Positions 5,701 to 60,812 of a DNA stretch of 64,000 bases are shown here, piece after piece. The stretch covers positions 15,314,001-15,378,000 of the forward strand of contig OZ059898.1 in NCBI GenBank assembly GCA_964057225.1. The letters are read 5' to 3'. Position 1 is the stretch's first letter, and each line of letters starts with the position of its first letter. The notes below the pieces were generated by a model that had not been told where the DNA came from, ran no database searches, and saw only the letters and a list, made by a program, of their open reading frames with translations. The stretch is from Auanema rhodensis. Taxonomy: Eukaryota; Animalia; Nematoda. The position numbers and the translations under genes are program-made.

Positions 5701-8700
5701 ATTAACACAATTAATTAATTCTTGATAATTAGCTAATTATAAATAAAAATTTCCATAATTACTTAGAACAAATGAAAAGTTATATATGGAAAATGGACGT
5801 TGTAGTTTAATTTTAAATTTTCAACTGAAATATACAAAAAAAAAGATAAAATATTTATATATTATAATTAGTAAATATTATTTGATTAGTTATTAATTAT
5901 TTTTTAATATTTTGCTTATTTTGTGATGAGACAATTACATAGTAAATATACTTATATTTATGATTATATTCAATATCATATTGTATTCAATTTTTCATTT
6001 TGAGCTATATAAATCAAAATATAATTTTAAAAGTAGTCCAAGTAGTTTAGTTGAATAGTTAATCTTCTAATTATTAATTATATAATTTTTATTTCTTCGA
6101 ATATTCATTAAATAATATATAATATATAGTATACTATAGTACTAAGTGGTTAACTTGTCTCATTCTCTCCACCCCATCCCACCCTCTCTAGAGTACTACG
6201 AAAAATATATAAAATATGAACAAATTTATTAAATATTATAGTTTTCTTCCTTTAATTTATACTTTCAACTTTTTTTTCTTTCTTTTATATAATATTTTTA
6301 AAATATAATAATTAAGCAATAATAAGAAAACTTTACTTTAACATTAGGATTTATTGAAATTTGAAGTGAGTAAGCCAATAGTCAGAAGTTATTACTTCTT
6401 GATATGATACGGTACTAGAATAGCTTAAGTTGTAATATTTACTTCAATTTCTCCTGTGAGTTCTTTTATCTTCATGTTTAGTGTCTACTAATTTCATTTT
6501 TGTTATTTTATTGTTTCAAATCAGCCATTATGAACCATGGTGATTGTATGCTACAATTAAAAAACTCTTTTAGCTATTTCATCAGTAATTCTGCTACTTC
6601 TTATCCCTTTGGTCTGATTAAGTTGATGTGTCTGGTCTTTGTTACCTCAAAATAATTTTACGAAACTCATACTATGTAATCTGAGAAAATTACTTTTTAA
6701 TAATTTTTTATAATATTATTAACAACAAATGTTTTAACATCATAATATTCATACAGTAAGTTTCTTCTCAAATAGTATTTTTCCAACTTAGTACATCAAT
6801 ATTCTCTCTTGTAACTACTTGTAACTAAGGAAAAACGAGGATCAACGAAGAAATTTAATCTTTTATCTCAAAGACAAAGACAACAATACTATATTTAACA
6901 TTAGCCTGTATATTAGTTTTCTGATAAAATTCTATTTTCTCCTGCAAGTTCGTTCTGTGCAAAACATAGAAATATTATATGTTATGTTTATATTATTTAA
7001 AAAAAATAAATTTAATAATTTAAATGAAAATATTCAAAAACAACTGATAAACTTATCTTTTCTTAAACAGCTCACAGTGTTAGATCAATGAAAATTCCCA
7101 AAACAAAGTACCAACCAACGATAGTCATTGCTTTGAGTTTTTAGATTATAAGTTCATCCATAACGTATAATCTAAAACATTTGTTTGTTTGTTTGTTTGT
7201 TTGTTTATTGATTAATGGCTCAAAGCATATTGACAAGTACAGCTTTTGAGTTTTATACAATGAATCCTGTAATAAACTTTTCTTTTAGTTATTTTCTTAG
7301 TTACAATAAATTTTATAAATTTTGTCAGATTTCATATGACTTTGACTAATTTTTAAAAATGTTTCGGCTATAGTGTTGTTACCCATCCCTCAGTGCGGTG
7401 AGCCAAAGTGTCAAATGTCGAACCAGCGAACAATCTGCTTGTTTGTTGTTTATTCATAAAAAAATACTAATTTACAATTTACTGACATATCAAAAGTATT
7501 TGATATTTGATCCATCACTCTCTACATTCATCTCTTATCTCCCCCCCCCCCCCCTCTCTCTCTCTCTCTCTCCCTCTATGTGCTTACGTATTAACATTTA
7601 TAATCAAGTTTAAAAGTTTTATTAAATTCTCTCACATTAATCTACATAATATAAATCTAAAAAGATTTTTTTTTGTTGGAAATTTGTTGTGATTGACGTA
7701 GTGAATAGATTGTTCTGTGTTTTGTTTTAATCAAATTCAGAGTATTACAAGTAGATGATGACGCAATGAATAAGCATCATATTTCAAAAAAAGAAGAAGA
7801 AGAAGAAGAAATATTATTTTAAAAATAAAAGTTTATTAACTTTTTTTCTCTATTTAGTCGATAAACGACAAACATATACAATCTATAGACAGATACTAAT
7901 TTTCTTTTTTAAAATTAAATTATTTTTTAAAGAATAATAAAAGGAAAATAATAAACATATACTGTATGATAATTAATGAAATAGAACATAAAAAAAAGAA
8001 ATTGAAACATAAACAATAACATTGAAAGTAAAAATAAAGAGAGGGAGGGAAGGAGGGAAGAAGAGAGAGAGAGAGGGGGGGATTGAAGGGGGGAGCGAAG
8101 ATAAAGAGAAATTCTTAGAGAGATAGAGAGAAAATGAAATTTCTTTAATATTTTTATTGTAAATGTATAAAGATAGTAAGGGGAGGAGATAAAGAAGTGA
8201 TAATACGACGACGTTGGAAAAAACCCGCAGATATTCTGGAGACAACTTGAGCTGACATAGACCAAAGCATGCCCTGATGCTAAATACAGTTAGTGTTTTT
8301 TATTTTTTTGAAAAAAAATGGAAAAACGGTTTTACCCAATATTTGGATGTGATTTGAGCTGTATCAGCTCATGACAAAATGAGAGAAAATATGAAATAAA
8401 TTACAATCAAGAGATGTAGAGAAAAGGTAGAAAAATAAAAATTAAAAGGTAGAAAAGAAGGAAAAGGATGACGACGACGTCAACTTAAAGACCGGGATGT
8501 ATGAAAACTGTTTAGGGAATTGCGTAAAGTGGCTACATATGAGCGAGAAGAGCAAGATGAGAGGAATAACATCAGATTGTACAAGTTGTGGTAGACAAGA
8601 AATAGATCGGATCACATAAATTGAAACCGTAGACGAAAAACAATTCTGTTTCGCTGAGGATCTTCCGGAGCAAAATGAGAAACTTTGTAAAGAAATTAGA

Positions 8701-8728
8701 CATTAATATTTCTCGAATCGAGAGACAT

Positions 8729-11700
8729 CTATGCCAAATGATGTAGCACGATGAGCACTATAATACTGCTGAGATAGCCTAAAGCAGTTGTTGAGCCTCC
8801 TGGTGCTTCAGTTACAGTCAATCCGTGATGATTGAAGGAAGGTGATGTTGGTACAGCTGCAAGAAAAATGAGAATTATAATTGATTTCAAAGATTCTTTC
8901 ACATATGGAAGTGAGATAGCTATAGATTATGCTGAAATAAAGTAGTTGAAACATACCTGATGTTAGCTGTCCAGATGGTCTTACTGTAGCTACGACAGCA
9001 TTCATATCATCGTCTATGGGCTCATCACCTGAACCATTGCCAGATCCAGCAAAATCTTCATCATCAAGCCATGGACTAGCAGAACCCTCATCTGGCATCT
9101 GGAAAGTTGAAGCATAAGAAGCATTGTATGTATGTACATATAAAAAATGATTAAATCCAACCGACATATGCAATCAGGAAACTAAAAATGAATTTCAAAT
9201 GAGGCAATATAAACAGGAAATTCTCTTTTTTTGGAGAAATAACAAAGATTTGATGTTTGAATTAAATTTCGGAAAAAAAAATTAAAAGAAATTTAAATGA
9301 ATTTCAAATATTTTTACAAAATAATTATCAAAGTTCAGAAGAATTATCAGAATTTTCTTAATTTGATGACTCATTTTCATGTTTTTTCCCGTATAGTAGA
9401 AGATTGAAAAGATTTTGAATCTAAAAATCTTGTTTTCTATTGGGTGAAACTAAAAATTGAATTTGAAATCTTGGTAAAAGCAAAGAATAGATGATAAGTG
9501 TGAACGAACAAGATATGAGATAGGACTAAAGCTACCTCATTATTGGAAATTTTTGTTCGGATGCCAGTTTGTTAGACAAATTTTCATCTAACTTGTAGAC
9601 AACATTATGATTAGAGAGAGAGAGAGAGAAACAGAGAGAGGGAGATAGAGAGAAAAAAAAGGATTTGTAACTGTTAGATTGATACTCATACGCCAAACTC
9701 TCTGGTGTTTTAACCCTTTTTGAGCAAAAACAGCCATCTCCCCCATTTCTTTGAATCTATGCCAATCAACTATCGGAAGTTTTCTGTTTTCTCAAAAAAA
9801 ATAATATCATTTTCACTAAAATATTTACTTGAAAATCTAGTTTTTCAAGTAATTTCAATGATATTACTGAGAACAAAAGTTCAATATCTAGTCGGTAGCG
9901 ACTAACTGTTTTTCGACGATTTGCTAGCTCAGCTATGGTCGTCGTTCGTCAATAAACATGATGGACAGAGCATCTGCTAGTTTCTGAATCAGAAAAAGAC
10001 AAACTTTAACGAATGACAACACAAGCTTCACTTCATTATCGAATAACTTAGATCTTAGACAAGTTTTGATGGAAATGTCGAAGTTTCCATCTTTTCTTTC
10101 ATTTACAATCTTCAGAACCAACTATAGCTGTATACTACCACTACTGCTACTACTACGCTTTATCTGCGAAGTGATGCACATTTCGATCGTTGAGAATCAA
10201 AATTTGACAAATTGTATCAGAGCTACATGAAAAATACCAAAAGTTCATATTCTATAGATGATATAATCCGAGTTTTACATTTGTAATTTCAACCGGTATT
10301 ATCTCCCTCATATCTTTTCATATTTTCCGTTGGTCTTTGAACATCTCTCCTTTCTCTCTCTCTCTCTCTCTCTTAAACTCTCAAATCTTCAAGTTCATCT
10401 ATGTGACTGTTTCTTTGCCATTTTAAGCTGAAACAATCAGTAACAAACAAGAACAAGAAGAATAAAGAGATGGATGATCTGAGAATTGCAACGATATGAA
10501 GTTAAGAAGAAGAGAGCCAGATAGTGAAAAGGGTGCGACTGACCAAATATGGTCGATTTCCTGGGAAAGTGTCGTCGTGTTACGCTCCCTAATTCTCTGA
10601 GAGGGATTAAGATGAAGTACAAGCTGAAGATATTAGTCATCGTTTACAAGTATAACGTAGTCCGAAACAGAATGTTCTTACAATTCTCTATGCCTTTCAT
10701 CATCCCTTATTTCATTTTGCTTTTGCTTCAACCATATTGAAGTCAAAAAAAGGCAGAAATGAGAAATACTATACGACGACTGGACATGAAAGACAAAGCT
10801 ATTATAACTGATTATATATGAGTTCATGAGGAAACGAAGAAAAAAATGAAGAAGAAACGATGAATAGTTCGAATGAATGAAGAGTGAATAAGGTCTTGTT
10901 GACACAGCTAAAGGCTTCATCTATTCATTCATTTCATATAATATGAATGGGCTATACTATACTTCTAATTGAACTACGTTTACAAGAAAAATAAAAACAA
11001 TTCTTTATGTCTTTTGCTTTCAACAGAAAGAGAAATGCCTACTAATTCTGAGAGGGGAGAAGTGAACATCCATTAGATCACCACTTGTTATAACTTCAAT
11101 ATAGCTGCTTGTGTATATATTACTAATACCATTTGAACATCACTAGTTAGGTCAAATTAGCCCAGAGAAAGAGATCCAACTGTGAATCGAATTCTTCTTA
11201 TAGCATCGTGCAAATACTCTTGTGTTCATCTTTGTTCATAGGAAGCTAGACAACATTCCCAAAACTTCTTGCTCCCCATATGACCTATATGAGCTAGTAC
11301 AGCATCAATCTCAGCTCAATCAAACATATTCCAAGACGTTATATGTCAGAATACATACACATTGTCTGTCAATAAGCCGCTTTGTTTCAATGTAATATAG
11401 CATGATGATGGAAGACCTATATTCAGAAGCTGAATGCAGTTCCGACGACAGCCGACAAGAGACACAGGACTTCATCATCTTTCTATGTATTCTAATGCTC
11501 ACATATGAAGTTTGTAGGAGTTGAGATCCTTTCTCAGATTGCTTGTACTAGTTGCTTGCATAAGCTTCAGGAAGTTCATCGAGTCAGTAATTTCATTCAA
11601 GTTTTAGTCAGCTTTGATTTCATTTTGAATGAAATTTCTTCTATTATCTTCATTCATATCAATATAACAAGCTTTGAAAGCTCAAAGCCATGAATTTCAA

Positions 11701-14700: not shown

Positions 14701-17700
14701 TTTTTTTGCCCATTTTGATAAAACAATTCTTTTTTCAATACTTGAATATACGAAAGCTATGCGATGAAGAGACTGGAGGAAGATTGTAAGACGAAGACAG
14801 TGGATGACAATCGTTGTTGAAATGTGTCTTTCTGATACAAAACGACTTGAAAACGGAGCGCTGAGGTAATAAAAGCGGAGGAGAACAGAGACTAAGGAGG
14901 GAAAGAGAGAAAGGGTTTGTAACGTTTGATTGGGTCGTCGTATGTGCCACCATATATATGGTTTCTAGTCTTGAGGCCTTTACGCATAGCTGTCTGAATG
15001 TCAGCATAGCAGAGATACATCATCAGACAAACTGAGAGGCAAAGAGAATATATATCTCATCGGCTTTCTATAAAGTTTATGTTGTTGTCAAGTTTTTGAA
15101 CCTCACACATACACACATCATCATATCCATATAGCAGCAGAGAGATATAACAGTGCAGGACGATGATAACGTTCTTTTCTTCTCGTGAGGGACATCCTGT
15201 CAATACGCATGAAGTAGTTGGTGACAAGCTCTCGTTCAAGTGTCATCATCATCATCATCATGATAGTGATAATCCAACACCTATCTGATCATCAGTACAT
15301 CAATATCCTGACCTTTCAATATATATTTTTCATTTTTGGCCTAACAACTATCCCTACTACTGTGTTGTTTTCTTCTTTTTATTTCTTCATCTCCATTTTA
15401 CCCCCCCCCCCTCTATCTCTTTTCCCCTTTTTAAGGGCATCCCGTTCTATAAATGCCAAGTGAAGGACATTACATATAGCTTGGTAAAATGGTTTTTAAA
15501 CTGTCTAATTGACGAGGAAATATCAAGATATGACCACGAATTGAAAAAGAAAAAAACGAGCAAAACCGACAGTTTACAGGTCGATTGATCATCATATCAG
15601 ATACAGACATGCATAGAGTAGGCTTATCACATGTCTTACCAGACATCAGAACGGATGAAAAAAAGATTTTTCGTTGCAAGACCGCAAGACTGTCTGTGTG
15701 TCTATAGGACTGTTATGCTTCATCACACGTCAGACAGTCAGTTTTCATTCATTCAAGTCACGAAAGCTTTTTCCTTATCAATTGGAAAAATTCATACGCT
15801 GATGACGAGATGGAAGAAGAAGTTAGAAGGGAAAAGAAGAATTCGTTTTCTCTTTGGTTGTTTCATCTACCAGTTTCCCTCTTCTATCTCCTCTATTCCC
15901 TTTTCTCTTACTGAGAGAGTCGAAATAAAAAGGTTCATCGGTTGTCACAGAGCAAATTTGTGTCTTCTGCTAAATTCTGTTGAGGAAGAGGATATGGAAA
16001 GTTGGTGAGCTGAAAGGTCAGACATCAAATAGCAAATAAGGAATACGAAACATCTGTCTTTTCTATCGACAATCATACTTTTCACTACTACGTAATGCAA
16101 CAATGTATTTCCCTTGAAATATAGTTGAATTCGGCTCTATTGGATGTGTGTAACTACATAACCTAGTAAGAAGGTTCAGTTGTTTGAGTAGAGGCTTCTA
16201 CGAGGTCAAACTTGTATGTAAGTTCAAGATGATACTGATGCAGTCGTTCTGTAAGATCCCCTCGTACAGCACAATGCTGTTGTCGTGACATTGTGACAGC
16301 ACAATCAGATGTGTCAGGTACAGGCTACTGCTGATGCTGCTGTTGTGTAGTATGCAGATTGAGTAAATATAGCACACACCAGGAGATTCGTTTCCTTTCT
16401 TACTTTTCTTTTTCGGCTTTTCCTCGCATGTGTCTCAATCCCCCCTCTCCCTTCCATCTCTCTGCACCTTCGTCCACATACACATGAACAAGCAGACATA
16501 TCCCATACAAACAGCGGCAAAACTGCCTTTGATAACTAGGATGACCGTTGCCGATGAAGTAAGCTGAGAATTCATTGATTTGAGAGATATTGAATATCAT
16601 TGAATGGTATGTAGCTACGGCGATGAAAAGGTGCGAATAGGAGTGAGAGAACAGACACATAGAGGGAAAGATAAAAGGCAGAAGCTCAGAATATGCTTTA
16701 AGTCATCAAGCTTTCTTGACACGCCTGAACAATTTGGTTAAATAAAGGTCTGATGAGATTAATATGCAGAGTATATAGCTCATTTTCTCCTTTTTTACAA
16801 TCTGATTGCAATATTTTCCATGGATTTTGTTAACAAAAATGTAAAAATAGAAATGTTTCAAGCATATGCTGGCACAATGCTTACAGATTTCAACTCGTTA
16901 CTCTGCTTTAAGAAGTGAAAAGAGCAAAAAAACGTATTTTAAGATGAGAGAGAGACAGCTCTCGTGCTCCGCATGTTGAAAGAACATCTAGTACATTCAG
17001 CTGCTCAGAAATACGTTTCGGTGTTTCAGTTATTTCCTCCTCATCATCATAACCAGCTACAACGCACATGCAGTTGACGTCTGCTGTTTCCCAGAAGTGA
17101 ATTTTTCGTTTTTTTCCCCTCAAAATGCTTGAAAAGTGTAACAATGAAGTCAAAATGATGAGCATAAACATAACGATTAGGAAGCAGGATATAGAAGATG
17201 GCGTATAAACAACCAAAATAAGTATTCTGTTGTTAATTCCATCACTTAGATCATCAGACTCATGTTGAGTTTTACGTGAGTTTTTCCCCAAAAAATAGTC
17301 CTTCAGCAGGTTTTTCAGTATCTTCATGGCCATACAACACATAAAATCTAGAAAATCATCCCTTGCTCTATGAACTTCATCAAATTTTCTTTCAGGCAGC
17401 AGGAACAAGGAAAGAAACTACTTAACGTCGGCATTGATGACGTATCGTGCGAGTTAACTCGGCGCTAGTGAGCTATCAACATTTATTCTGTTGTTACTCC
17501 ATCGGTCATCTTGATTACAAACCTATAGCCATGGTTTGTATGAGGTCCACCAGATTAGGCTTAACCGATTTCTCTTTTGGCCTTTTCCGAGTAATTAGAG
17601 CTGTTCACGTACGTGAAACCCAATGCAGCCGGTCATTTACGCAAATTGATTGCCGAGAGAATAGTAGGAAGAAGATATATGAACTGAAGCTGTGCTGGAC

Positions 17701-19416
17701 CATGGGAGAGATGGAGCTGTATAGCTCTTCAAACCAGTTGCTATCCCGGATCACATGAGACTGGGTCACGGTCAAGCCATGAATGGATATACAACGGAGA
17801 ACGAATACGTATGAGATCCGAGAAGAGAAAAAGAGGAGTAGTAAAGCATAATTAAAGTTTCAAATGTGTAGAAGCCTAGAGTGGCCTTTCAGCTACACGC
17901 GCATCAATTGTGGAAACGAAGGATAGAATTGGGAGGAAGAAACTAAGAAAATGAATCGACAAGCTGGCACTGACGTTGCAAGGGGAAGCTGGTTAACTAG
18001 GCTGGCCGGCTGGCAGACTGGCTGGCTTGCACGCTGTGATTGGAACGTACAAACATACTCGAAACGTAAAACTTCTAGTGAAGCAGAAATGCAACCGACT
18101 CTCTTCATTGGCACAAACAGCCAAAATGAAAACAGCTGCAAGTGTCAGATTCGTTTATTCAAGTGTATAACACGTGAGTCACGTGTAATTAACATATTAT
18201 ATGACCTCTGTGTAAACAAGTATGTTTCTGGACCGTTTGTTTCATGAAGCATACTGTTAGCCATGTGTTTGTAACCTCTCAACATACGATTATGCGCATA
18301 CCATTTGGCATAAATGATTGTTCAGCAAGAAACTATAACAGAATTATTAGAAAACTATTCTGATAATCTTTGTTGAAATACATTTTGAACCAACAAGCCT
18401 GAAGACACATTGGATTCGCAGTCGGTTGGGGAGGAGGTTCAATCAAAGCAAGCCGAGATCATCAGTCTTGGTCAACTTAAATGCAAGTTGGATAGAGATG
18501 AAGCGATGAGGCAAACGGCTACGAGTCACTGAATATCAAAAAAAGCCAAAGCAATTGCTTAGCATTCCAGCCTCCTCTTCATCTTTCCTCGTCAGACCAC
18601 ATACGCACACATCATGAGCATGGCTTAGAAACATTGAGTAGGCGGATTTCCCAATGAAAAAAGGGCGGCAAAAAACTGCTGGTAAATGAGAAACACATGA
18701 ACTTGAGAGCATTGACAGCAGCTACATGCGTTTCCCTCCATTCTGAAGCAGCAGCATGGCTCAAAGTTGAACTTGCAAGCACATTTACATAGTCTGGGAA
18801 GCTTTTTTTTTGTGTCGGAAACGGATTCGCTATTCCGGAAAGAGACTACTGACTTTCATGATTTTGGCTCTTCGGGAGCACATTCCGTCCTCATTTGCTC
18901 GTCAGAGTTTCGTGCGTTTTTTCGAGCTCAAAATAGAGAAATAGATGAGCTTAACTGCTCAAGCTGACTGATGACGGCTCAATAGTGAATAGTGTGAGCC
19001 AGGCAAAGAGCAATAGGAGCAGTAAGAGAGCAGTAACCGGAAAAGCTTATCGCAAAATGGGCCCTGAAGGCACGAAGGAGTGAAATGATTGAAACAAATC
19101 GAAGTACATATGGCATGAACTAAATGTCTGAAACTTGGCTTCATGTGTACGAAGATCAGTGATGGGGGGAGGGTGGGTGGCTGGGTTTCAGTGTGGGTGT
19201 GGACGAAGTAGTCTCAGACTATATTTGCTTTTGAAATTCAAAATAATGTTTATTGAATTAAGAGAAAACTATAGAATATGTCTCTTAATAATAATGAATT
19301 GAATGAAGAAATCTATCCACCAGGAGAAAGAAGAAGGAGGAAGAACTACTAGATAGGACACCTTCACTATCTTTCTTCTTCATTCATGAGACTTTTTTTT
19401 CAGAAAATAAAAGATA

Positions 19417-19451
<35 letters not shown>

Positions 19452-22400
19452 AACAGAGGGAGAGAAAGAAAACAATGAAAACAAGAGGTAAACTCGAGAA
19501 AATATGAGATTGGAATGAGAAAGAGATTGTATGAAGTTGAGAGAAAAATAGATGAATGAAATGAAAGATGAGGTATCAAAATGACATATGAGATGCGAAA
19601 AGAAAAAAAAACTCAATCATGTTTTGTGAATCAGAAGTAAATTTCGTCGAATGTTGATTTGTATTGATACTACTACATGAAACCAATTATCATTTTCTTT
19701 TCATTTTATGCTTCTTTTAGACGAAAAAGAAAATCGAAATGATTATACGTATAATATAATTTTCCTGAAAACTGGAAAATTTGGTTAAAAACGAAAAAAA
19801 AGAAAAGAAAATTGAGTAAATGATAATAAAATTATAATAATAGTGTATTGAAAACACAAAAAATGGGAAAGAGAGAGAGAGAGAGAGAAAGAAGAAGAGT
19901 AAAGGTAAAGGTAAAGAGAGACAGGCAACTACATATAGAGAGAGGGAGAGAGATTACGTCAAAATACAGGAAAAACCTAGCATTACATCATCAAAATGAA
20001 CAAATTGAATAGTTGATGATGTTGTGTAGTCATCAAACTACAAGTAAAAAAGTCGAAAAAATAGCCAAAGGTCTAGATTTTTGAAGGCAAAATGGCTATA
20101 ACTACGATTTCATCAAATGAAAAAGTCCAAAAAATAATTGAAAAAGTGACAAAAATACGAAAAACATAATGAAAATAAAGAAAATGAAGCGTACCTTTGG
20201 TTTGGGCCGAACATTCTTGAGTATGGACGGCTCGTCAATCGAGTGACCATCAGCTTCAACGCTTCTGTAACATGACGTAAGTAGAATAGTGAATACTAGA
20301 ATAGTGGCAGTTAATCGTCCCGGTGCTATCAGCTTTTCAACGACGAGCATCATGAATCTCCTTCGGATTTTAAGAGGGAGGAGAAGATAGTTGAGAGTTG
20401 AATCTTTGTAATTTCATATGTTAGAAAGATATTTTAATCTTATTTCAACGATAAATCAAAGTAATTAACATCAAAAATTTAAAAAAAAGGAAAAAAAGAA
20501 AAAACCGACGAATATGCACGCATGCGGCTTACTTAACGGGAAGCAACGTCCGATTTGTTGCCGACGGCGCCAGTCATAGTCACGCCCATCCCTTGGCCCC
20601 GCCTCCTTCCAAGTAGAAGGGAAAAGAACATAACGTGAGAGTTCATAGGAAAATAAGAGAGATTAGACAAAGAGAGAAAGATATATGCAGGTAAATTAAT
20701 TAAAATGACTGATACTTGAAGGTAAGTAAGAAGATTTAATGAATAAAGAAGAATAGGGAAATATGAGTTATTCAACATTCAAGAGGCATAATTTTCCTTT
20801 TTTCATCAAAAACAAAAAGAAAAGATGTAAAGTTAAAATGTTTCATCAATAGTTTGAATAATTCTAAATCTCAATATTAAACTAAAAAATATATGAAACG
20901 CATGAAACTAGTTTTGAAATAATTGTAAAAATTTGAAATACGTGATTTAGTTGAGCGTTAATTATTGAAATTTACAATTAAATTTTATTAATTTTCATGA
21001 TTTTACAATGAAAACAAATATTTTGTAAAGCTTTTTCTTTTGGATAAAAAACTTTTTTTTTCAAAATAAAAGGTAGAGGAATGAATTGGAAGTAGTAGCT
21101 AAACAGGTAGGATGGAGAAAAAGGTGAAGAAGGTGGGTGGATTGATGAGAAAGAGAGAGAGAGAGAGAACCAGAGAGAGAGTAGATAGATAGATGATGGC
21201 AGTTTTCTGTGGTTTCGCGTTTTATTTTCGCAGTTGGTGGCCTTTTTGCCCTTTAGAAGCCAAAAAATTTGTATTTGTTTTCATAATGAACGTTTGAATT
21301 GAATTCAAAAATAGAAATTAGAAATACAAGAAATGAACATTTGACGAGAAACTGCAGATTTAGACGGATATAACAGATAGATTTGAAAGATTTTTTGTTG
21401 TTTTTTAGTTAATTTTTGTTGTTGAAAGAAGAGGTCGTAGGATGAGGAAGAAGAAGAAGAAGAAAAAAAGATGAAGAGTTCTATCAATAGTTTTGATAAT
21501 CAATAGTGTGTTGAAGATGAAGATGAAGGAAAAACGATGATAATGATGATGAAGAAGACGATGATGATGTGAGCAGAGATGGTACAGCCATTTTGAATTT
21601 AAAATTTCACAAGGTTAGTAAATTTTCCAGTGATATATTGACTTGAAAACATGATTTGTTGTTGATTTGTCGATAAATAAAAAGAGAAAATGTTTTGATT
21701 GAAAAAGAATAGCCCCTTGTGCTTAGAAGATTACAAGCCTGATTGCTAAATGTCACATTCATTCAGCTCGTTGTTTCTTAGATAATAATTGAAGAAGAAG
21801 ATTATGATGAATCTTGATATTAGTTTTTAAGATTAAAGAATACTAAATCTATCTTGTTATTGAGGAAGATTCGGCTTCTCATTTCTTGGGTTATTTCAGT
21901 AAATTAGAGAGTTCAATACATACATATCTCATGTACTGATGACAATCTTTTGACATCTCCTTATAAGGTCAACTTTGGCATGTTGAATGAAAATTGAAAG
22001 AAAGAAGATATCAAAGAACATGAATTTCTTAAGTTTATATGATCTAGTTAGCTATATATAGAATAAAAGAAATAGTTGTTAGATGAAGAATTCACACGTA
22101 TAGTTAACATAATATACTATAATTATGGCAATGAAGGACATGTTGCATCACGCAATCGGCCTATCGTGATGGTATTTCATCGAATAGCGGATGGGCTCGC
22201 TAACTAATACAAAGTATCTTCTTAGGATGTTACATTGCTTTTTGGGATCTCTCGTAATCTCACTCTCTCTCTCTTTCTCTCCCTCTTAGTAGATTGATCT
22301 CTTTGATCATTTCTCTTAAGAACTTTCGAGGAAGAATTCTTAGTTCAAGTATATACATATGACTCGAGAGCATAAACTGTTATGACTATGATCACCAAGC

Positions 22401-25400
22401 TGCATCAAAGCCAACTAATTTCCTTCTTTTTCAAATGGCATCAACGAATCAGATAGCAAGTCAATTTCTCTATGATTATTTCCTTTATTGCTTATCTTTC
22501 GCTTAAAACTCATAGATAGATCTCTCTTTCTCTCTCTCTCTCTGATTTCCTGTTCAGATTTTCTATAAATCAAGTGAGTTCATGAGCTTGATGGTAATCT
22601 GCACATGCGCTCTATTGACCGGAATCTACACCAATTTGCGCGAAAATCCGTTTTTCAACTCAACTCTCCCTATTTCCCTGCTGAATCGACTTCAAAATAG
22701 GAATTTTCAAACAAAAGATTCGCAGATACTACATGTTGTCGTCGCATAGCAAGCCGTATTGTCTTTAATTCTTCTTTTTCTTTTTATTTGTGGACGAGTA
22801 TGACTGCCAATGAAGAGGGAAACAGATATATACCTGATTATGTTTGTTCCATTCCAACAAAAATTTTCCGTTGATGGATCAGAGCAAACTCCTTCCGCTA
22901 CAATCCTCCAATGACCATTGTAGTCGTTTAACTGTAATTAGCATTGAGGGTCAATCTCGTTTGTAGTTAAATCCTCTCTAAACCTGACTAATCATCGTTT
23001 CTAGACGACGCGGCACAGATTTAGGTGCATGATTTGGCATAGGCGAAGCTTTTGTGGCGACGAATTGTCCGTTCGCTTCAGATGGTAAGGTTCCACAATG
23101 CCCAACAACATTACGAGCAAGATCTGGAGATGTGACTTCAACAAGCCGACGTAAATCATTCAATAGTCCTCGACGAATCTAGAAAAATTCAAACAATATA
23201 AGATTGAAACAAGAGAATACAGTATTACCACATTGAATCCATCATCAAATAAGCGATTTAATCGAGTTAAAGCAAAAATATGCTGATCAAATTGAGTATT
23301 GAGTTCTGAGAAACAATCATAACTAACTTGATTACAAGAAGTTCTGTAATACTGGGCTATAACATCATTCTCATCTCAACTATCATACCGGCAATATCCC
23401 ATCCGATCTGCTATACAACTTTCACAATTTGTAATTCTTGTATAGTTTCTGGAGCAACCAGAAGATAACTTTGATTCTGATTCAATGAGAAGAGTTTGAA
23501 GAGCCATTAATCGGCTTTCAATTAATTGGTAATGTTCAATTGTATTGGCTAAGCTGAAAATCAAATTTAAAAAAAATAAAAAGGTTAAGGAAATCTCTCT
23601 CTTCTCTCTCTCGCTGTTAAAACTTGAACACAAACCTTTTTGCAATTGAAATTTTCTCTTTTCCAAAATATGAATGCCATTTAGATGAATGATGATGCAT
23701 ACATTCAGTATATGAAGTTAATGCTGAAACACATTCACCCATTGTTAAACAAAGAAATGTTGATGGTAATATATCCGAATAGAAATCATGTAAATATTCT
23801 GTAAGATGCCTGTTACGATCTGAAGTTGTCATCTGAAAATTTATTTTAAAAAAGATTATTTTGAAGAAAAATTTAATTTGTTTTTTTTTGACAAAAAAAG
23901 CATAAAGTTTATATTAAAAGCTGGAATTTTAGATATTTTGCTTAAAATAAAATGAAAAAAAGTCAAAAAATACCTTAGTCGAATGCATAATATCTTCAAT
24001 TTTTTGAATTAATTGATGAAAATGCTGTTGAAAATCAGTATGTGTTATAAGCATTCCATATCGAGATTTCAAATGATTTATAACATCAAAACGTGTTCGT
24101 TCTAATAAATAATATTTTTCACCTTAATTATATTCATATAATTAAGGAATATATAGAATAATTACTTACGATCAGCTTGATATATCATATCACGTATTCT
24201 TGGTAACATCTTCAATGATGTTATCTTTGTTACTAATTTCAAATGATCTTCTGAATTCTTTATATTGTTTTCTGTTAAACAATCACAATGTGGATGTGAA
24301 GTTATTGTCTAAAATATTATAATTATGCTAATTATATTAATTAGAATATTCAAATTTTTTTTGTTCACGTTTTACGTGTAAAATTTTTTTCATTGAACCT
24401 ATACATTTCATTGAGAACGGTTGGTTTCAAATTTAATTGTCAACTAATAGAAATTTCATTAAAATTTTTATTTTATTTCCGAAAATCCGTTTTCAATTTA
24501 TCTGCTATTTACGTTAAACTCGACTTTTATAATCAAATACTTTATTAATTTCCTTAATTTATATATTTGAAGCTTTGATCTGTGTTGAAATTACAAAAAT
24601 AGCTTCAAATATCAAATATAACAAGGTGATTGTGATCCGGAAGTTGCAATAGCCTCATCAAAAAGGTTTTGCAGCTTCAAATCGTTTTGATGTTAGCCGT
24701 GAATAGCTTCAAAATCATATTCATAACCCCTGGATTCATATAATTCAGATGAATGATGAACGGAATAATATGTTTTAGATGATGATATGGCCACAGGTTA
24801 ATCCAGCAGTAGTCATCCACTCTTGATGTGCTGACATGACATTTGCCGATAGGAAAATGATCATATTAGCATGAGATTGAAGTTGTATTGCTAACAGCAT
24901 TGTCAGTTATTGTTTATAATAATAAGAGTTACAACTATATTTCATGTATTTAGATTAGAAGAACAAAAGAAAATTGTTTTTCTTTCTTTTCTCTTTTTTT
25001 TTGTTTTTTTTTTTGAATAATGAAAAAAATATATTCAAACAATATTAACGAAAAATTGGTTTTAAAACTACGAAATAATGAATTGAATAATTGAAATTGA
25101 TGAAGAAAGAGGGTGGATCTCAAATAATAAAAAGAGAGATAGAGGAATAGTGAGAGAGAGAGAACGAGAGAGAGAAATGAAAGTGAATATAGTATCATGA
25201 TAGCTAAACAGCTAACCGGAAATGTTAGAGATAAGCGGAAATTGAACTAGAAAAATCATTTCCGATCCCTGTATTCGGTTATATTTTCAAACTCGGGGAC
25301 GATAATGGGGTGATGATGATGATGATGATGTTCAGACACCATGTACAGTCTTTTCGACAAGCTGTCACTGATTGATAAGTTATGGATGACGGAATATGAG

Positions 25401-26970
25401 CCGGATGTACAGACAGAAATAGATGATCACTATGTGATTTCATTATGAAGATTATACTGCTAGATATAGTTAAATTAATTGAAAAATAGTTATTTTGAAG
25501 ATGATATACATCTTGAACTCTTCAGATGTTCTATACTCCAGAATTGAAAAAATAGAAAGACGACCAGGAAGTGCAATAGCTATTGGATTCCTTAAATCTC
25601 ATGGGAAACAAGAAAAGAAAAAACCTATGAGAGGAAGAAATATTTATTAATTCTACTTATTAGTAGAATTGCAAAGTAGAGCAACGGGGATATAGGGGTA
25701 GGGACACGTGAAAGCATACAGCTTACAGCATGAGATTGCACTCAAAACTTATTGATCTCTGATGATCATTTTGACAGAAGATGATGCTTTATGAATGAAA
25801 TTCTTGTCAGTCTGATCGTACCAGCCACCCTCCTGGATAACAAATGAGAGTCCGACGAGTAACACAGAAAGAATTTAGAAATGATAGAATAGCGGCTAGG
25901 TCTTTGATTTCCTTAGCCAGCACCTCATTAATATTATCAGAAACGACTACGTGCTGTCGATTGTGAAGGCATCGTTTTGGCTATTGTGTCATCGTTTCCA
26001 GATGGAAGATTAATCGTTTAGAAATCGACGAATACGAACGTTTCTCAATGCTGAAGTTGGTCATGTCTCAGACATGGCGCTCGAGTAATGATGGTTAGAG
26101 CTGGCGTAAGGAGTGGTACATGAAGCTGTGAATCTACCGTAATGCTTTAATAGAAGTTTTTTTTCTGAAGAACCAAATGAAAAAAAAGAACAAAGAATTG
26201 GAAATTATTTTAGATTTTTCGAAACAAAAAAAAAATAAAAGAAAGTCATAAATCAAATTGTAAGTTTGTGAGAATAAGAGAAAAGTTGCAAAAAAAACCT
26301 CCAATTGATGACCTTTTCTGTTCTTTTTGATTTCAAACATACTTCTAACTGATTTCTGAGCCTTGCTGTTCCGCAAACGCAGTTTTTTTCAATGAAAAAA
26401 CGAGGGAATTCCCAAGAATTAGGACAAAAATCAGCATTTTTTGAATTGTATTGTTCAATTTTTGAATCTTTTTTCTATTAAATAAGAAGAAGGAATAGAT
26501 GGTGAAGGACCACAGAGCCAGTTGTGCGAAGAGGGCGACGATGTCACTCTGTTTACACAGGATAAGATTTAAGATTGCTCATTAAAGGTGACTGATACTC
26601 TTGATATTAACAAAAAATTTAGAGAAAGAGCTTAAGTCAAATGAAAGTTTCATTGAAATATCCAATGTGATATGTGGTGGAATAAGAAGTAGAAAGAGAG
26701 AATAAGAAAGCTGATGTTTAGGCTAGAACAAACGATAAGGTTGTAGGCTGTAACAGGTTGCAGGTGGAAGATTGCCTGATGAAGATTGATATTAAACATG
26801 AAAACTGAGAATATGTGATGAGGAAGTTGTATAAAATGAAGAAAATTACAAGAAATATTAGTTTTTTTTAAATTTGAAAATTGAATTGAAAAGTAAATAT
26901 AAGATTAACATACGATTGGAAAGAAGAAGAGAACTATCAGTAGAGATAGACGATGTAAATGACCAATCAT
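8729..26970 (-). CDS. lon-2: Glypican (GPI-anchored heparan sulfate proteoglycan), LON-2 ortholog, 477 aa, 11 exons
   Basis: Exons with GT-AG borders, phases consistent, 1434 nt in total: 26970-26914, 24308-24170, 24101-23974, 23832-23636, 23553-23389, 23343-23229, 23178-22984, 22931-22834, 20264-20195, 9098-8957, 8856-8729. The protein has a signal peptide (MIGHLHRLSLLIVLFFFPI) and exactly 14 Cys in the core (HCDC, FLCLTMGEC, ECM, GCS, NCESC, YCRTSC, DCF, HCG, VCS, FCWNGT). It also has an acidic Ser-Gly cluster (EGSASPWLDDEDFAGSGNGSG) and a hydrophobic GPI tail (LGYLSSIIVLIVLHHLA*). The FLCL.GxC, VRPK and EGSASP motifs match C. elegans LON-2 as recalled, rather than GPN-1. Confidence 0.92.
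20528..20606 (-). promoter_or_regulatory. Candidate internal promoter in lon-2 intron 8 (GC boxes plus GGCGCC)
   Basis: GC-rich island in AT-rich intron. On the minus strand it reads GGAGGCGGGGCC (20606-20595, Sp/KLF box), GGGCGTG (20587-20581), GGCGCC (20571-20566), then a GTAAG donor (20532-20528). It lies about 200 bp upstream of an in-frame ATG-ATG at 20353. Confidence 0.45.
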
Positions 26971-26992
26971 TATATATATTATGATTATATTA

Positions 26993-27000
26993 TCTGAAAT
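26993..27000 (-). promoter_or_regulatory. Probable SL trans-splice acceptor (ATTTCAG) 23 nt upstream of the lon-2 ATG
   Basis: Consensus nematode 3' splice site with no upstream coding exon needed, since the signal peptide starts at the next ATG. Confidence 0.6.
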
Positions 27001-28369: not shown

Positions 28370-28689
28370 TCCTTCTCTTTCTTTCTTTCTCTCTCTTTTT
28401 CGTTTCCTTTTAGTTCAAATACTTAATGCTTGCTTAATTCTTTTTTTTTTCAGGAAAAAAATGATGAGTGGATGATCTGTGATTTCAAAACAAACTGATT
28501 GTTCAATGTTTTCCACTTTTCTAATTCGTTTATGAGTTAAGATTAGAACTATATGAATTTCTTTTAATTATTATTATTTTTATTAAAAAATTTAATTATA
28601 TTATATATTAAAAGCTTTAATTATATAAATAATATATTTCAATTATTATATTTGAAGACCATCATAGCTCTTATTTCCCGCCATAGTGT

Positions 28690-28771
28690 GCAGTCATGTC
28701 CGAGTGGTTAAGGAGATTGACTAGAAATCAATTGGGCTCTGCCCGCGTAGGTTCGAATCCTGCTGACTGCG
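28690..28771 (+). tRNA. tRNA-Ser(AGA)
   Basis: 82 nt, GCAGTCA...TGACTGC acceptor stem, anticodon arm ATTGA-CT-AGA-AA-TCAAT, long variable arm, GGTTCGAATCC T-loop, T-run terminator downstream. Confidence 0.97.
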
Positions 28772-29219
28772 AATAATTTTTGTAGAATCAAGAAACAATT
28801 TTATTGATTCATTTGCTTCTCCTATCTGTCCTCTAGCTGTTCCTCGTCCGAATGTACCATAGATACTGATTAGAGACTCATTGTTCATCTCTCTCCTGAA
28901 AGTGGAATGTCCTTTCAGATGGCAATGTATATGAAATTTTACTTTTTTCTTTGTTTTTTTTTATTGAAATAAGTCAAGTTGAACATAGAATAATACTATG
29001 TTGATGAATATTTCTTCAATCAAGATATGATACTTCTACATGGGATTTTCATATTCAAAGGATCCGGCACCCGTTTCTTCCTTCGCTTCCATACTGTAGA
29101 ATCGCCAACGATGTTAGGCTCTAAGTTTGCGGCACTTGGTTCAGTTCCCCGTTTTTAAATCAATTTTATATTTTCTTTTTCATTTTAAATTTATTGTGCT
29201 GTTAAATAATATTTCTCGT

Positions 29220-59450: not shown

Positions 59451-59522
59451 TTCCGTTGCGGGGAATCGAACCCCGGCCTTATGGGTGAGAGCCATAAATC
59501 CTAACCACTAGACCACAACGGA
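59451..59522 (-). tRNA. tRNA-Glu(CTC)
   Basis: TCCGTTGTGGTCTAGTGGTTAGGATTTATGG-CT-CTC-AC-CCATAAGGCCGGGGTTCGATTCCCCGCAACGGAA, 72-nt cloverleaf. Confidence 0.97.
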
Positions 59523-59638
59523 CATGTAATTCTCTTCAAATTATATATCTTTGTTTTCAAAGAAGAACAGATGCTTTTATTCGACTCAATGTTACAGCAC
59601 ACGTCAATCATGATGAACAGAAAAATGGTCATATTCAT

Positions 59639-59711
59639 GGCCGCGTGGCGCAATGGATAACGCGTCTGCCTACGGAGCAGAAGATTGTAGGTTCGAATCC
59701 TGCCGTGGTCG
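59639..59711 (+). tRNA. tRNA-Arg(ACG)
   Basis: GGCCGCGTGGCGCAATGGATAACGCGTCTGC-CT-ACG-GA-GCAGAAGATTGTAGGTTCGAATCCTGCCGTGGTCG, 73 nt, with a TTTT terminator. Confidence 0.97.
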
Positions 59712-59899
59712 TAACTTTTGGAAAATGTCTCTCCAGCGTTAAATTTGTCATACAAATTTTTTTCTTGTTTCTGTGAGAAGATAATACATAGTCTGTCTAT
59801 ATGGTCACTTGTTCGTATTTGGCTTTTGTGGAACATCTTCACCCTTTCTCAGAAATCTTGTAAAATCTAAATTTGTTGTTCAAAATATCCAAAAGCTTA

Positions 59900-59971
59900 T
59901 TCCGTTGCGGGGAATCGAACCCCGGCCTTATGGGTGAGAGCCATAAATCCTAACCACTAGACCACAACGGA
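59900..59971 (-). tRNA. tRNA-Glu(CTC)
   Basis: Identical to the 59451-59522 copy. Confidence 0.97.
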
Positions 59972-60087
59972 CATGTAATTCTCTTCAAATTATATATCTT
60001 TGTTTTCAAAGAAGAACAGATGCTTTTATTCGACTCAATGTTACAGCACACGTCAATCATGATGAACAGAAAAATGGTCATATTCAT

Positions 60088-60160
60088 GGCCGCGTGGCGC
60101 AATGGATAACGCGTCTGCCTACGGAGCAGAAGATTGTAGGTTCGAATCCTGCCGTGGTCG
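60088..60160 (+). tRNA. tRNA-Arg(ACG)
   Basis: Identical to the 59639-59711 copy. Confidence 0.97.
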
Positions 60161-60739: not shown

Positions 60740-60812
60740 GGCCGCGTGGCGCAATGGATAACGCGTCTGCCTACGGAGCAGAAGATTGCAGGTTCGAATC
60801 CTGCCGTGGTCG
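60740..60812 (+). tRNA. tRNA-Arg(ACG), T-stem variant
   Basis: Same sequence except GTAGG to GCAGG in the T-stem, which converts a U-G pair to C-G. Confidence 0.96.

What the first reader, a model, noticed from the sequence alone, without database searches (positions are those of the whole stretch)
20195..20606. Hidden 'mini-glypican': an internal promoter and second signal peptide in lon-2 intron 8 could make a core-less HS/GPI isoform
Seen: the reading frame of lon-2 exon 9 stays open about 30 codons upstream through its splice acceptor to ATG-ATG at 20353. It encodes MMLVVEKLIAPGRLTATILVFTILLTSCYRSVEA-DG, which has a basic residue, a roughly 14-aa hydrophobic core and a V-E-A cleavage-type site. 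About 200 bp further upstream is a GC island with two Sp/KLF boxes, a GGCGCC, and a plausible 5'UTR intron (donor 20532, acceptor 20404). Splicing this exon (20353-20195) to exons 10-11 gives a 142-aa protein with signal peptide, acidic Ser-Gly HS sites and GPI signal, but no 14-Cys core. Known: LON-2 antagonises DBL-1/BMP; engineered C-terminal HS-bearing fragments of C. elegans LON-2 were reported to inhibit that signalling alone; GGCGCC is a BMP-Smad element. Inference: a natural, separately promoted and possibly BMP-inducible feedback inhibitor isoform. Caveat: intron 3' ends can read as hydrophobic by chance.
Basis: partly seen in the sequence, partly recalled or inferred. Interest (0 to 1): 0.82.

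Follow-up and report, generated by a model that had tools for sequence, protein, structure and literature searches.

The report
Natural core-less glypican short isoform
A roundworm glypican gene makes a second, short messenger RNA that starts inside an intron and encodes only a signal peptide, the sugar-chain attachment sites and the membrane-anchor signal. The same hidden start is kept in five distant parasitic worm species, so this stripped-down proteoglycan is probably a real and previously undescribed product.

Summary

**RNA evidence.** Spliced RNA contigs from four runs of one study show two mRNA forms.
- The canonical form joins exon 8 to exon 9 (22834 to 20264).
- The second form is colinear with the genome from 20405 to 20195. 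It is not spliced at 20264. Its 5' end carries CAAGTTTG, the 3' end of nematode SL1, and it is spliced from 20195 to exon 10 (9098).
- In the second form the first AUG is the ATG-ATG at 20353, in frame with the glypican tail. The product is 142 aa.

**Conservation.** The in-frame ATG plus hydrophobic leader upstream of the orthologous exon-9 acceptor occurs in all five strongylid loci fetched: Cylicocyclus, Necator, two Angiostrongylus species and Ostertagia. About 45 other exon starts in the same genes lack it. The chance rate is 1-3% per acceptor-like site.

**What did not hold.**
- The proposed 5'UTR cis-intron is really an SL1 trans-splice site.
- The GGCGCC "BMP element" is not conserved.
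- The promoter is inferred, not mapped.
- Secretion, glycanation, GPI anchoring and BMP antagonism are untested.
- Orthology to C. elegans lon-2 could not be checked.

The papers searched describe no natural isoform of this kind. They describe only an engineered equivalent (PMC3875644).

The parts
20547..20606 (-). GC island, candidate internal promoter. It holds Sp1/KLF-like boxes GGCGGGG (20603-20597) and GGGCGTG (20587-20581), and GGCGCC (20571-20566).
   Evidence: It is the most GC-rich 60-mer of the 64-kb window at 66.7%. It lies 142-201 nt upstream of the trans-splice acceptor. Every strongylid locus has a 63-75% G+C 60-mer starting 208-299 nt upstream of its alternative ATG. Promoter function is inferred; no TSS data were available.
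20406..20546 (-). Presumed outron, the transcribed leader removed by trans-splicing.
   Evidence: No RNA contig covers it (tables 2 and 8). This is expected if SL1 replaces it. Its extent is inferred.
20404..20405 (-). AG of the SL1 trans-splice acceptor (attacaaAG|ATTCAAC).
   Evidence: Contigs of all four runs end their genome match at 20405. In X2 and X4 the 8 loose letters are CAAACTTG on the plus strand, which is CAAGTTTG on the minus strand. With the AG this reads CAAGTTTGAG, the 3' end of SL1 (table 7). The genome has AATTACAA at that place.
20354..20403 (-). 5'UTR of the short mRNA (50 nt, no ATG).
   Evidence: Covered by contigs. It contains no upstream ATG.
20265..20353 (-). Isoform-specific coding sequence, ATG-ATG to the exon-9 acceptor. 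It encodes the signal-peptide-like leader MMLVVEKLIAPGRLTATILVFTILLTSCY(R).
   Evidence: Sequence. Transcribed colinearly with exon 9 (records 1, 3, 5, 7). It has a net +1 n-region, a 16-residue uncharged core with KD8 3.34 (canonical leader 3.56), and a V-E-A|D site. The homologous leader is conserved in 5 strongylids.
20195..20264 (-). Exon 9, shared by both isoforms (SVEADGHSIDEPSILKNVRPKPK).
   Evidence: The canonical joint 22834 to 20264 is present, and the 20195 donor joins to exon 10. Its orthologues are RVQFADEFSVGTKDVRPRPE and similar.
8957..9098 (-). Exon 10, the acidic glycosaminoglycan-attachment region (DDEDFAGSGNGSGDEPIDDD, two tandem Ser-Gly sequons).
   Evidence: The loose end at 20195 equals 9098-9069. 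Translation. Acidic residues C-terminal of Ser-Gly specify HS through EXTL3 (PMC10570366).
8729..8856 (-). Exon 11 coding part, with a GPI-signal-like tail (…EAPGGSTTALGYLSSIIVLIVLHHLA, stop at 8731-8729).
   Evidence: The 17-residue hydrophobic tail has mean KD 1.94 and is preceded by small residues. No GPI predictor was available.
7888..8728 (-). 3'UTR (its end is approximate).
   Evidence: Inferred from length only. The X1 contig is 1327 nt and 1111 nt of it lie beyond 20195. The contig letters themselves were not shown.
22834..26993 (-). Canonical glypican exons 1-8, absent from the short form. Exons: 26993-26914 (ATG at 26970), 24308-24168, 24120-23974, 23832-23636, 23553-23389, 23343-23229, 23178-22984, 22931-22834.
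   Evidence: Spliced contigs with GT..AG joints in 4 runs. The exon-1 letters are located. Weak Pfam Glypican hits fall on two exons.

Best explanation
The glypican gene on the minus strand has two transcription units that share their last three exons.

**Long form.** Eleven exons, about 484 aa. It encodes an ordinary glypican.

**Short form.** It starts inside intron 8, probably at a promoter in or near the GC island at 20547-20606. Its leader is replaced by SL1 at the acceptor at 20405-20404. The sequence 20403-20265, which is intron in the long form, is exon in the short form. The first AUG (20353) opens the glypican frame with a 30-codon extension that has the build of a cleavable signal peptide. 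The mRNA then uses the normal exon-9 donor and exons 10-11.

**Predicted product.** A 142-aa precursor is processed to a peptide of about 85 residues. It lacks the cysteine-rich core, carries two acidic Ser-Gly glycosaminoglycan sites and has a GPI-anchor signal.

**Predicted function.** By analogy with the engineered C. elegans LON-2(423-508) fragment, it would act at the cell surface through its heparan sulfate chains, for example by restraining BMP-type ligands.

**Shown:**
- the mRNA structure;
- the SL1 5' end;
- the open frame;
- conservation of the alternative leader.

**Inferred:**
- the promoter position;
- translation;
- signal-peptide cleavage;
- glycanation and GPI anchoring;
- any role in signalling.
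For: **RNA.**
- The runs are cDNA-derived: seven joints, each with GT..AG ends on the gene strand.
- The X1 contig (1327 nt) lies on 20405-20195 without a gap. Beyond 20195 it continues with letters identical to 9098-9069.
- X2, X3 and X4 each have a contig on 20405-20238 that crosses the 20264 acceptor unspliced.
- The loose 5' letters CAAGTTTG plus AG equal the SL1 3' end. The chance of an 8-mer match is about 1 in 65,000.
- No coverage lies further upstream, so this is not intron retention. No joint 22834 to 20404 is seen.
- Contig depths of the two forms are of the same order (short form 14.9-19.2, long form 7.1-21.1). The tool warns that such depths cannot be ranked.

**Frame.** There is no ATG in the 50-nt 5'UTR. 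The frame runs through to the stop at 8731-8729.

**Conservation.** The orthologous leaders are:
- Cylicocyclus: MPHITTVALLLVLFSCCR|VQFADEF;
- Necator: MPRITTYIILLLFACYR|LQVADDF;
- Ostertagia: MSRITTLTVILLFCNCR|LQNAADEL;
- Angiostrongylus cantonensis: MSLRIRLNTTSAIIRLAMLIMLLFSYCR|IQLATDDF;
- Angiostrongylus costaricensis: MSLRIRINTTSAIIRLTMLIMLLFSYCR|IQLATDDF.

The window protein is only about 40% identical to these glypicans, and flanking intron sequence is at random-alignment level.

**Controls.**
- None of about 45 other exon starts reaches the threshold of a Met plus a 10-residue KD mean of 2.3 or more.
- The chance rate is 1-3% per acceptor-like site. The joint chance is 6e-4 if only two lineages are counted as independent, and 4e-11 if all six are.

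**Leader features.** All six leaders have signal-peptide features.

**Function by analogy.** From PMC3875644. The acidic tandem Ser-Gly rule for HS is from PMC10570366.
Against: - No signal-peptide or GPI predictor was available, and no protein-level data exist.
- All RNA evidence comes from one study, and only as assembled contigs. Contigs cannot give true 5' ends or expression levels.
- Only 5-8 SL1 letters are present.
- No TSS data exist.
- The window's GC island is not detectably homologous to the conserved strongylid upstream block (nhmmer finds nothing there).
- No RNA evidence was obtained for the strongylid species.
- Clade III contigs did not reach exon 9.
- C. elegans could not be examined.
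- A globular core has been reported to favour HS over chondroitin on glypican-1. This is my own recollection of Chen and Lander 2001, not checked here. The glycan type on a core-less form is therefore uncertain.
Confidence: 0.8

Rival explanations
1. The short SL1-capped RNA is real but has no promoter of its own. SL1 would be trans-spliced onto a cryptic acceptor within intron 8 of the full-length pre-mRNA, so the two forms are alternative processing products of one transcript.
For: No transcription start was mapped, and contigs cannot show one. The GC island shows no detectable homology to the strongylid upstream block.
Against: It is established in C. elegans that trans-splicing needs an outron without an upstream 5' splice site. 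Here the exon-8 donor at 22833 lies upstream and would be expected to cis-splice to 20404, yet no joint 22834 to 20404 is seen. Such a product would also hit a stop after 11 codons. A unique GC island with Sp1/KLF-like boxes lies 142-201 nt upstream. All five strongylids have GC-rich sequence, including a block that is 79-98% identical between them, at the same relative position.
Confidence: 0.1
2. The short mRNA is made and translated, but the N-terminus is not a cleaved signal peptide. The product would then be a signal-anchored, mis-targeted or rapidly degraded peptide, not a glycanated GPI-anchored proteoglycan.
For: No SignalP or GPI predictor was run. The window leader has an unusually long 13-residue n-region containing a Glu. 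In the strongylids the residue at -3 of the shared A|D site is Gln or Asn, which is atypical.
Against: The hydrophobic cores are 11-17 uncharged residues. That is too short for a membrane span and equal in hydrophobicity to the canonical leader. Other sites that fit the -3/-1 rule exist after the conserved Cys. The leader would not be conserved across six species without a use. The downstream parts are exactly those that work when given a signal peptide in C. elegans.
Confidence: 0.07
3. It is a chance open frame plus transcriptional noise. The intron's 3' end merely reads as hydrophobic and the RNA is a by-product.
For: Met plus hydrophobic extensions occur at 1-3% of acceptor-like sites. With about ten acceptors per gene, a single instance is unremarkable.
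Against: The extension is present at the orthologous acceptor in 6 of 6 species and at none of about 45 control exon starts. MP[RH]ITT / MSRITT is conserved among three strongylid families while the neighbouring intron is randomised. The RNA is mature: SL1-capped and spliced to exon 10. Its contig depth is of the same order as the canonical form in four runs.
Confidence: 0.03

Closest known systems
Engineered C. elegans LON-2(423-508) C-terminal fragment (Taneja-Bageshwar and Gumienny; PMC3875644)
   Same: It has the same parts list: a signal peptide, a short unstructured linker, two Ser-Gly GAG sites and a GPI signal, with no cysteine-rich core. Its 86-aa size is similar to the predicted mature peptide of about 85 aa. 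In vivo it inhibits DBL-1/BMP signalling and needs both the GAG sites and the GPI signal.
   Different: That fragment is a laboratory construct driven by the lon-2 promoter with the normal signal peptide. Here the form is natural, is made from an intronic start with its own conserved leader, and comes from a different nematode. Its activity is untested.
Canonical glypicans (LON-2, Dally, GPC1-6; Pfam PF01153)
   Same: It is the same gene and shares the last three exons, the GAG-attachment region and the GPI signal. The long form of this gene is an ordinary glypican.
   Different: The short form lacks the whole 14-Cys globular domain that defines the family and that binds ligands and partners. 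It is a product of a glypican gene, but it does not contain the glypican domain.
Internal-promoter, N-terminally truncated isoforms, for example Ce-punctin L and S made from alternative promoters (PMC8258370). SL1 trans-spliced intronic first exons, which are common in C. elegans, are a further example from my own knowledge, not checked here.
   Same: The mechanism is the same: an intronic start, SL1 trans-splicing, a private first coding exon and shared downstream exons.
   Different: Here the private exon supplies a second signal peptide, so a secretory-pathway product is kept while the entire folded domain is dropped. The papers searched describe no glypican example. The mouse Gpc6 alternative starts change only the 5'UTR (PMC5470264).

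Membership tests
Glypican (Pfam PF01153), long form of the gene | Cysteine-rich globular glypican domain | tested here: met
   Single exons give only sub-threshold Pfam hits (E 0.004 and 0.011). The exons align at about 40% identity, with the conserved Cys residues in place, to strongylid proteins that carry PF01153.
Glypican (Pfam PF01153), short form | Cysteine-rich globular glypican domain | tested here: not met
   The short mRNA starts at 20403 and contains none of exons 1-8. It is a product of a glypican gene but does not contain the glypican domain.
Glypican (both forms) | Ser-Gly GAG sites near the C-terminus with acidic flanks | tested here: met
   Exon 10 encodes DDEDFAGSGNGSGDEPIDDD. 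This fits the acidic tandem Ser-Gly rule for HS (PMC10570366). Actual glycanation was not tested.
Glypican (both forms) | C-terminal GPI-anchor signal | tested here: inconclusive
   Small residues (GGSTTA) are followed by a 17-residue hydrophobic tail with mean KD 1.94. No GPI predictor or experiment was available.
Secretory protein with a cleavable signal peptide (short form) | Basic n-region, hydrophobic core of about 10-16 residues, small residues at -3/-1 | tested here: inconclusive
   A feature count fits in all six species. SignalP was not available and cleavage was not shown.
SL1 trans-spliced nematode mRNA | SL1 sequence joined at a 3' splice site at the mRNA 5' end | tested here: met
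   The 8 loose letters plus AG read CAAGTTTGAG at the AG at 20405-20404 in runs X2 and X4. The contigs of X1 and X3 run 5 letters beyond 20405, but the tool did not show those letters. Only the last 10 of the 22 SL1 letters are seen. SL1 gene arrays in this genome were reported by earlier notes and were not checked here.
Orthologue of C. elegans lon-2 (rather than gpn-1) | Reciprocal best match or phylogenetic grouping with C. elegans LON-2 | not tested
No Caenorhabditis protein was returned by any search. The Atlas lead puts the strongylid orthologue nearest a Dally-named cluster, which is only a lead.
BMP/Smad-responsive promoter | Conserved GGCGCC / GRCGNC Smad element with partner site | tested here: not met
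   One GGCGCC lies at 20571-20566. No GNCV or GTCTG partner sits at the 5-nt spacing (read). None of the five strongylid loci has a GGCGCC within 450 nt upstream of its alternative ATG. At the roughly aligned position in A2 they read GGCGTA or GGCATA, but that alignment is not supported as homology.

The most novel reading that the evidence does not exclude
An ancient core-less "mini-glypican" would be a physiological second product of the lon-2-type glypican gene across rhabditid nematodes, possibly including C. elegans. It would be a GPI-anchored peptide whose only job is to display heparan sulfate. It would have its own promoter, and in strongylids its own ultra-conserved upstream element, so it could be regulated independently of the full-length protein. 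Worms could then tune BMP-type (or netrin, Wnt or Hh) signalling through HS dosage without the ligand-binding core.
Probability: 0.35. Interest if true: 0.85.

Novelty: new variant of a known kind. Interest (0 to 1): 0.72.

Why it matters
Glypican biology has long debated how much of the function lies in the protein core and how much in the heparan sulfate chains. That debate has relied on engineered deletions.

Nematodes may naturally make a core-less, HS-bearing, GPI-anchored form from a separate start. If so, the engineered "C-terminal fragment is sufficient" result in C. elegans has a physiological counterpart.

This would have practical consequences:
- lon-2 alleles and tags would need re-reading isoform by isoform. 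Lesions or tags in the N-terminal exons would leave the short form untouched.
- The conserved intronic leader gives a clean genetic handle. Mutating the intronic ATG removes only the short form.
- It flags a systematic gap in helminth annotation. The Necator, A. cantonensis and A. ceylanicum gene models break down at exon 9 (Necator, A. cantonensis) or just after exon 8 (A. ceylanicum).

Tried and rejected
1. **Word search with the open frame 20353-20105 (83 aa).** It found nothing. This species' proteins appear to be absent from the collection, so the blank says little.
2. **Exhaustive phmmer with exon 4.** The best hit was 53% identical. There was no close relative and no Caenorhabditis protein.
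3. **Two further word searches with a strongylid orthologue and with an 11-sequence profile.** They returned only Strongylida and one snail protein. C. elegans LON-2 was never retrieved, so neither the C. elegans test nor the lon-2 versus gpn-1 orthology test could be run.
4. **Clade III test.** Three Logan contigs were fetched: an ascarid (L008), L009 (ascarid/spirurid-like by its matches) and L010 (filarial-like by its matches). They carry exons up to exon 8, but no exon-9 or exon-10 motif lies in the 0.9-6.7 kb that follow. This is inconclusive.
5. **Homology of the window GC island to the strongylid 63-75-nt conserved block.** MAFFT placed them together, but an nhmmer profile of the block finds nothing at 20520-20620. 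The homology claim is rejected. Only position and GC-richness are shared.
6. **The conserved strongylid block as a structured RNA.** There is no Rfam match and no covariation, and the inner hairpin arm is deleted in Angiostrongylus. Rejected.
7. **Rfam on window 19500-23000.** Only chance-level hits.
8. **5'UTR cis-intron from 20532.** No contig or joint supports it.
9. **Literature.** Searches for a natural short glypican or lon-2 isoform found none.

**Left out by rule.** The joined 142-aa spliced model was not sent to any search or fold tool. Exons were handled one by one by reference.

Full report
**What is in the sequence**

The finding lies on the minus strand of an AT-rich window (about 32% G+C). 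The 70-nt exon at 20264-20195 is preceded by the acceptor ttacag and followed by the donor gtacgc. Its frame stays open upstream to ATG-ATG at 20353-20348. The extension reads MMLVVEKLIAPGRLTATILVFTILLTSCYR and then runs into SVEADGHSIDEPSILKNVRPKPK.

- From the ATG to 20195 is 159 nt, which is phase 0.
- Exon 10 (9098-8957) encodes MPDEGSASPWLDDEDFAGSGNGSGDEPIDDDMNAVVATVRPSGQLTS.
- Exon 11 (8856-8729) encodes …VPTSPSFNHHGLTVTEAPGGSTTALGYLSSIIVLIVLHHLA and the stop.
- The stretch 20547-20606 is 66.7% G+C and is the single most GC-rich 60-mer of the 64-kb window. It holds GGCGGGG, GGGCGTG and GGCGCC.

**The gene**

Four runs of one study hold about 17% of the sampled words of 19500-25400, roughly the exonic share. 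Laid on that stretch, their contigs are spliced: seven joints, each with GT..AG ends on the minus strand. The runs are therefore cDNA-derived, although they are recorded only as "RNA?". All contigs are 99% or more identical to the window, apart from one stray 90-95% contig in X3 (see "Noticed in passing").

The contigs define these exons:
- 24308-24168
- 24120-23974
- 23832-23636
- 23553-23389
- 23343-23229
- 23178-22984
- 22931-22834, then a joint to 20264

The 87-91 loose letters beyond 24308 start with sequence that maps uniquely to 26914-26943. That is exon 1, with its ATG at 26970 and a hydrophobic leader MIGHLHRLSLLIVLFFFPI.

Two exons give weak Pfam Glypican hits. An exhaustive phmmer search with exon 4 finds nematode glypicans. 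A strongylid hit then retrieves annotated glypicans of Ancylostoma, Necator, Cylicocyclus, Angiostrongylus, Ostertagia and others. Exon by exon, the window protein is about 40% identical to strongylid glypicans and 33% identical to an ascarid one. No Caenorhabditis protein was ever returned.

**The second mRNA**

The same four runs contain a second kind of contig (tables 7 and 8).
- In X1 a 1327-nt contig lies without a gap on 20405-20195.
- In X2, X3 and X4 contigs of 173-176 nt lie on 20405-20238.
- All of them cross the 20264 acceptor unspliced.

At 20195 the X1 contig continues with ATGCCAGATGAGGGTTCTGCTAGTCCATGG (minus-strand reading). This is exactly 9098-9069, the start of exon 10. The same loose end at 20195 appears in all four runs.

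At the other end the genome match stops at 20405 in every run. In X2 and X4 the remaining 8 letters are CAAGTTTG (minus-strand reading), where the genome reads AATTACAA. With the AG at 20405-20404 this spells CAAGTTTGAG. Those are the last ten letters of the nematode spliced leader SL1, GGTTTAATTACCCAAGTTTGAG (sequence from my own knowledge). Earlier notes of this scan report SL1 gene arrays in this genome; I did not check them.

There is no coverage from 20406 to 22833 apart from one stray, 90-95%-alike contig in X3. This is not intron retention or DNA contamination. It is a mature, SL1-capped mRNA whose body starts at 20403. Its 50-nt 5'UTR has no ATG, so the first AUG is the one at 20353, in the glypican frame.

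The remaining 1111 letters of the X1 contig fit exon 10, exon 11 and a 3'UTR of about 840 nt. I could not see those letters, so that part is inferred from length. Contig depths of the two forms are of the same order (short form 14.9-19.2, long form 7.1-21.1). The tool warns that such figures cannot rank expression.

**Conservation**

I fetched the genomic loci of five strongylid orthologues and located the exon-9 equivalent by its …DVRPRP[KE] motif. In every one the frame upstream of the acceptor is open to a Met followed by a hydrophobic stretch.

| Species | Locus | Alternative leader and start of exon 9 |
|---|---|---|
| Cylicocyclus nassatus | L002 | MPHITTVALLLVLFSCCR\|VQFADEF |
| Necator americanus | L004 | MPRITTYIILLLFACYR\|LQVADDF |
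| Ostertagia ostertagi | L007 | MSRITTLTVILLFCNCR\|LQNAADEL |
| Angiostrongylus cantonensis | L005 | MSLRIRLNTTSAIIRLAMLIMLLFSYCR\|IQLATDDF |
| Angiostrongylus costaricensis | L006 | MSLRIRINTTSAIIRLTMLIMLLFSYCR\|IQLATDDF |

The window's …GRLTATILVFTILLTSCYR|SVEADG fits the same pattern, R-[IL]-T-x-T… L-L-[FT]-x-C-[YC]-R.

Further points:
- Necator and Cylicocyclus differ by a whole codon and by several third-position changes.
- The two Angiostrongylus species differ by three synonymous and two conservative changes.
- As a control, I walked upstream in frame from about 45 other exon starts in the six genes. None reaches the threshold of a Met followed by a 10-residue stretch with mean KD of 2.3 or more, whereas exon 9 has it in all six.
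- Across all acceptor-like sites (YYNYAG|R) of the six sequences, the chance rate of such an extension is 1-3%. The joint chance is 6e-4 if only two lineages are counted as independent, and far lower otherwise.
- Intron sequence flanking the region is at random-alignment level between strongylid families. The leader is therefore under selection.

**Signal-peptide and tail features**

No SignalP or GPI predictor was available.
- By simple counting, all six leaders have a short n-region. Five have net charge +1 to +3; Cylicocyclus has only a His (net 0).
- Each has an uncharged core of 11-17 residues with KD8 of 2.85-3.52, compared with 3.56 for the gene's canonical leader.
- Each has small residues at possible -3/-1 sites. 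In the window these are V-E-A|D after residue 34 or T-S-C|Y after residue 28.
- The C-terminal tail has small residues followed by 17 hydrophobic residues.
- Exon 10 has two tandem Ser-Gly sequons with acidic residues on both sides. In a reconstituted system, acidic residues C-terminal of Ser-Gly are what make EXTL3 choose HS (PMC10570366).

**Promoter**

In C. elegans, trans-splicing needs an outron with no 5' splice site upstream. A pre-mRNA started at the canonical promoter carries the exon-8 donor and would be expected to cis-splice to 20404. No such joint is seen, and it would run into a stop after 11 codons. The short form therefore most likely starts within intron 8.

The GC island lies 142-201 nt upstream of the acceptor, a typical outron length. 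Every strongylid locus also has a 63-75% G+C 60-mer starting 208-299 nt upstream of its alternative ATG. Within it is a 63-75-nt block that is 79-98% identical across the five loci, and 92-96% among Necator, Cylicocyclus and Ostertagia. Flanking sequence there is 40-65% identical between different genera.

That block has no Rfam match and no covariation, and its inner hairpin arm is deleted in Angiostrongylus. I read it as a DNA regulatory element. It contains an Sp1-like GGGCGG (Cylicocyclus and Necator) or GGCGG box and a TGATAG (WGATAR) site.

An nhmmer profile of the block does not find the window's GC island. The two share position and composition, not demonstrable homology. None of the five strongylid loci has a GGCGCC within 450 nt upstream of its alternative ATG. 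The window's copy also has no partner site at the known spacing. The "BMP-inducible" idea therefore has no support beyond one hexamer in a GC-rich patch.

**Comparison with what is known**

PMC3875644 reports the following about C. elegans LON-2(423-508):
- it is an 86-aa unstructured fragment with two GAG sites and the GPI site;
- it inhibits DBL-1 signalling in lon-2 mutants;
- it loses activity when either the GAG sites or the GPI signal are removed.

The natural short form described here has the same parts and nearly the same size. Searches for a natural short or internally promoted glypican or lon-2 isoform found none. The mouse Gpc6 alternative starts change only the 5'UTR. The major lon-2 papers read do not mention isoforms.

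I cannot exclude that a gene-model database lists such an isoform without comment. The protein searches could not see products of about 125-142 aa when queried with full-length proteins, because of the length filter. The joined short model was not searched, by rule.

**Verdict**

- The central interpretation is supported at the RNA and evolutionary levels. It is a natural core-less isoform with a second signal peptide, made from inside intron 8.
- The cis 5'UTR intron is replaced by SL1 trans-splicing.
- The promoter is inferred.
- BMP inducibility is unsupported.
- Protein-level behaviour and function are untested.

This is a new variant of a known kind, an alternative-promoter isoform applied to a glypican so that the defining domain is dropped. 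It offers a clear and cheap route to a genetic test.

Noticed in passing
L002:20545-20619, L004:18784-18854, L005:26702-26764, L006:26822-26884, L007:28141-28211: A 63-75-nt noncoding block lies in intron 8 of strongylid glypican genes: GGCGGAGCGTGCTGTTGGCGTAGATCCGAACTGATAGCCGTCAGCCTCCGTTGACGGACTCATCAGAAGAC. It is 79-98% identical across the five loci (92-96% among Necator, Cylicocyclus and Ostertagia), while flanks are 40-65% identical between genera. It ends about 90-180 nt upstream of the alternative ATG. It is palindromic (CTGAT…ATCAG, CCGTCA…TGACGG) and carries an Sp1-like box and a WGATAR site. It has no Rfam hit and no covariation.
   Followed up: partly
L004 (Necator, P0016), L005 (A. 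cantonensis, P0019), A. ceylanicum P0011: Deposited gene models mishandle the end of the gene. Two read through the exon-9 donor into the intron (…VRPRPKVSAGGRY…, …VRPRPKVTQLYSI…). One stops after exon 8 and runs into the intron. The large introns around exon 9 seem to defeat gene callers.
   Followed up: partly
window 59451-62058 and 28689-28772: A cluster of eight tRNA genes lies here: five tRNA-Arg(ACG) on the plus strand and three tRNA-Glu(CTC) on the minus strand, in repeated units. A lone tRNA-Ser(AGA) lies at 28689-28772.
   Followed up: partly
window 21470-21666: One X3 contig, 90-95% alike, lies inside intron 8 with a loose end at 21536. It is probably a transcript of a related repeat elsewhere, not part of this gene.
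   Followed up: no
window 26994-26995: The canonical mRNA probably also begins at a trans-splice acceptor (atttcAG|ATAATATAATC). The contigs carry 87-91 letters beyond exon 2. Of these, 80 fit 26993-26914 and 7-11 are left over. The extra letters were not shown, so SL1 is not confirmed there.
   Followed up: no
window 9099-20194: Intron 9 of the glypican gene is 11.1 kb and 36.6% G+C (intron 8 is 31.9%). It contains several open frames of 80-170 codons on both strands, for example 16908-17408 on the minus strand. I did not examine whether a nested gene or a mobile element sits there.
   Followed up: no
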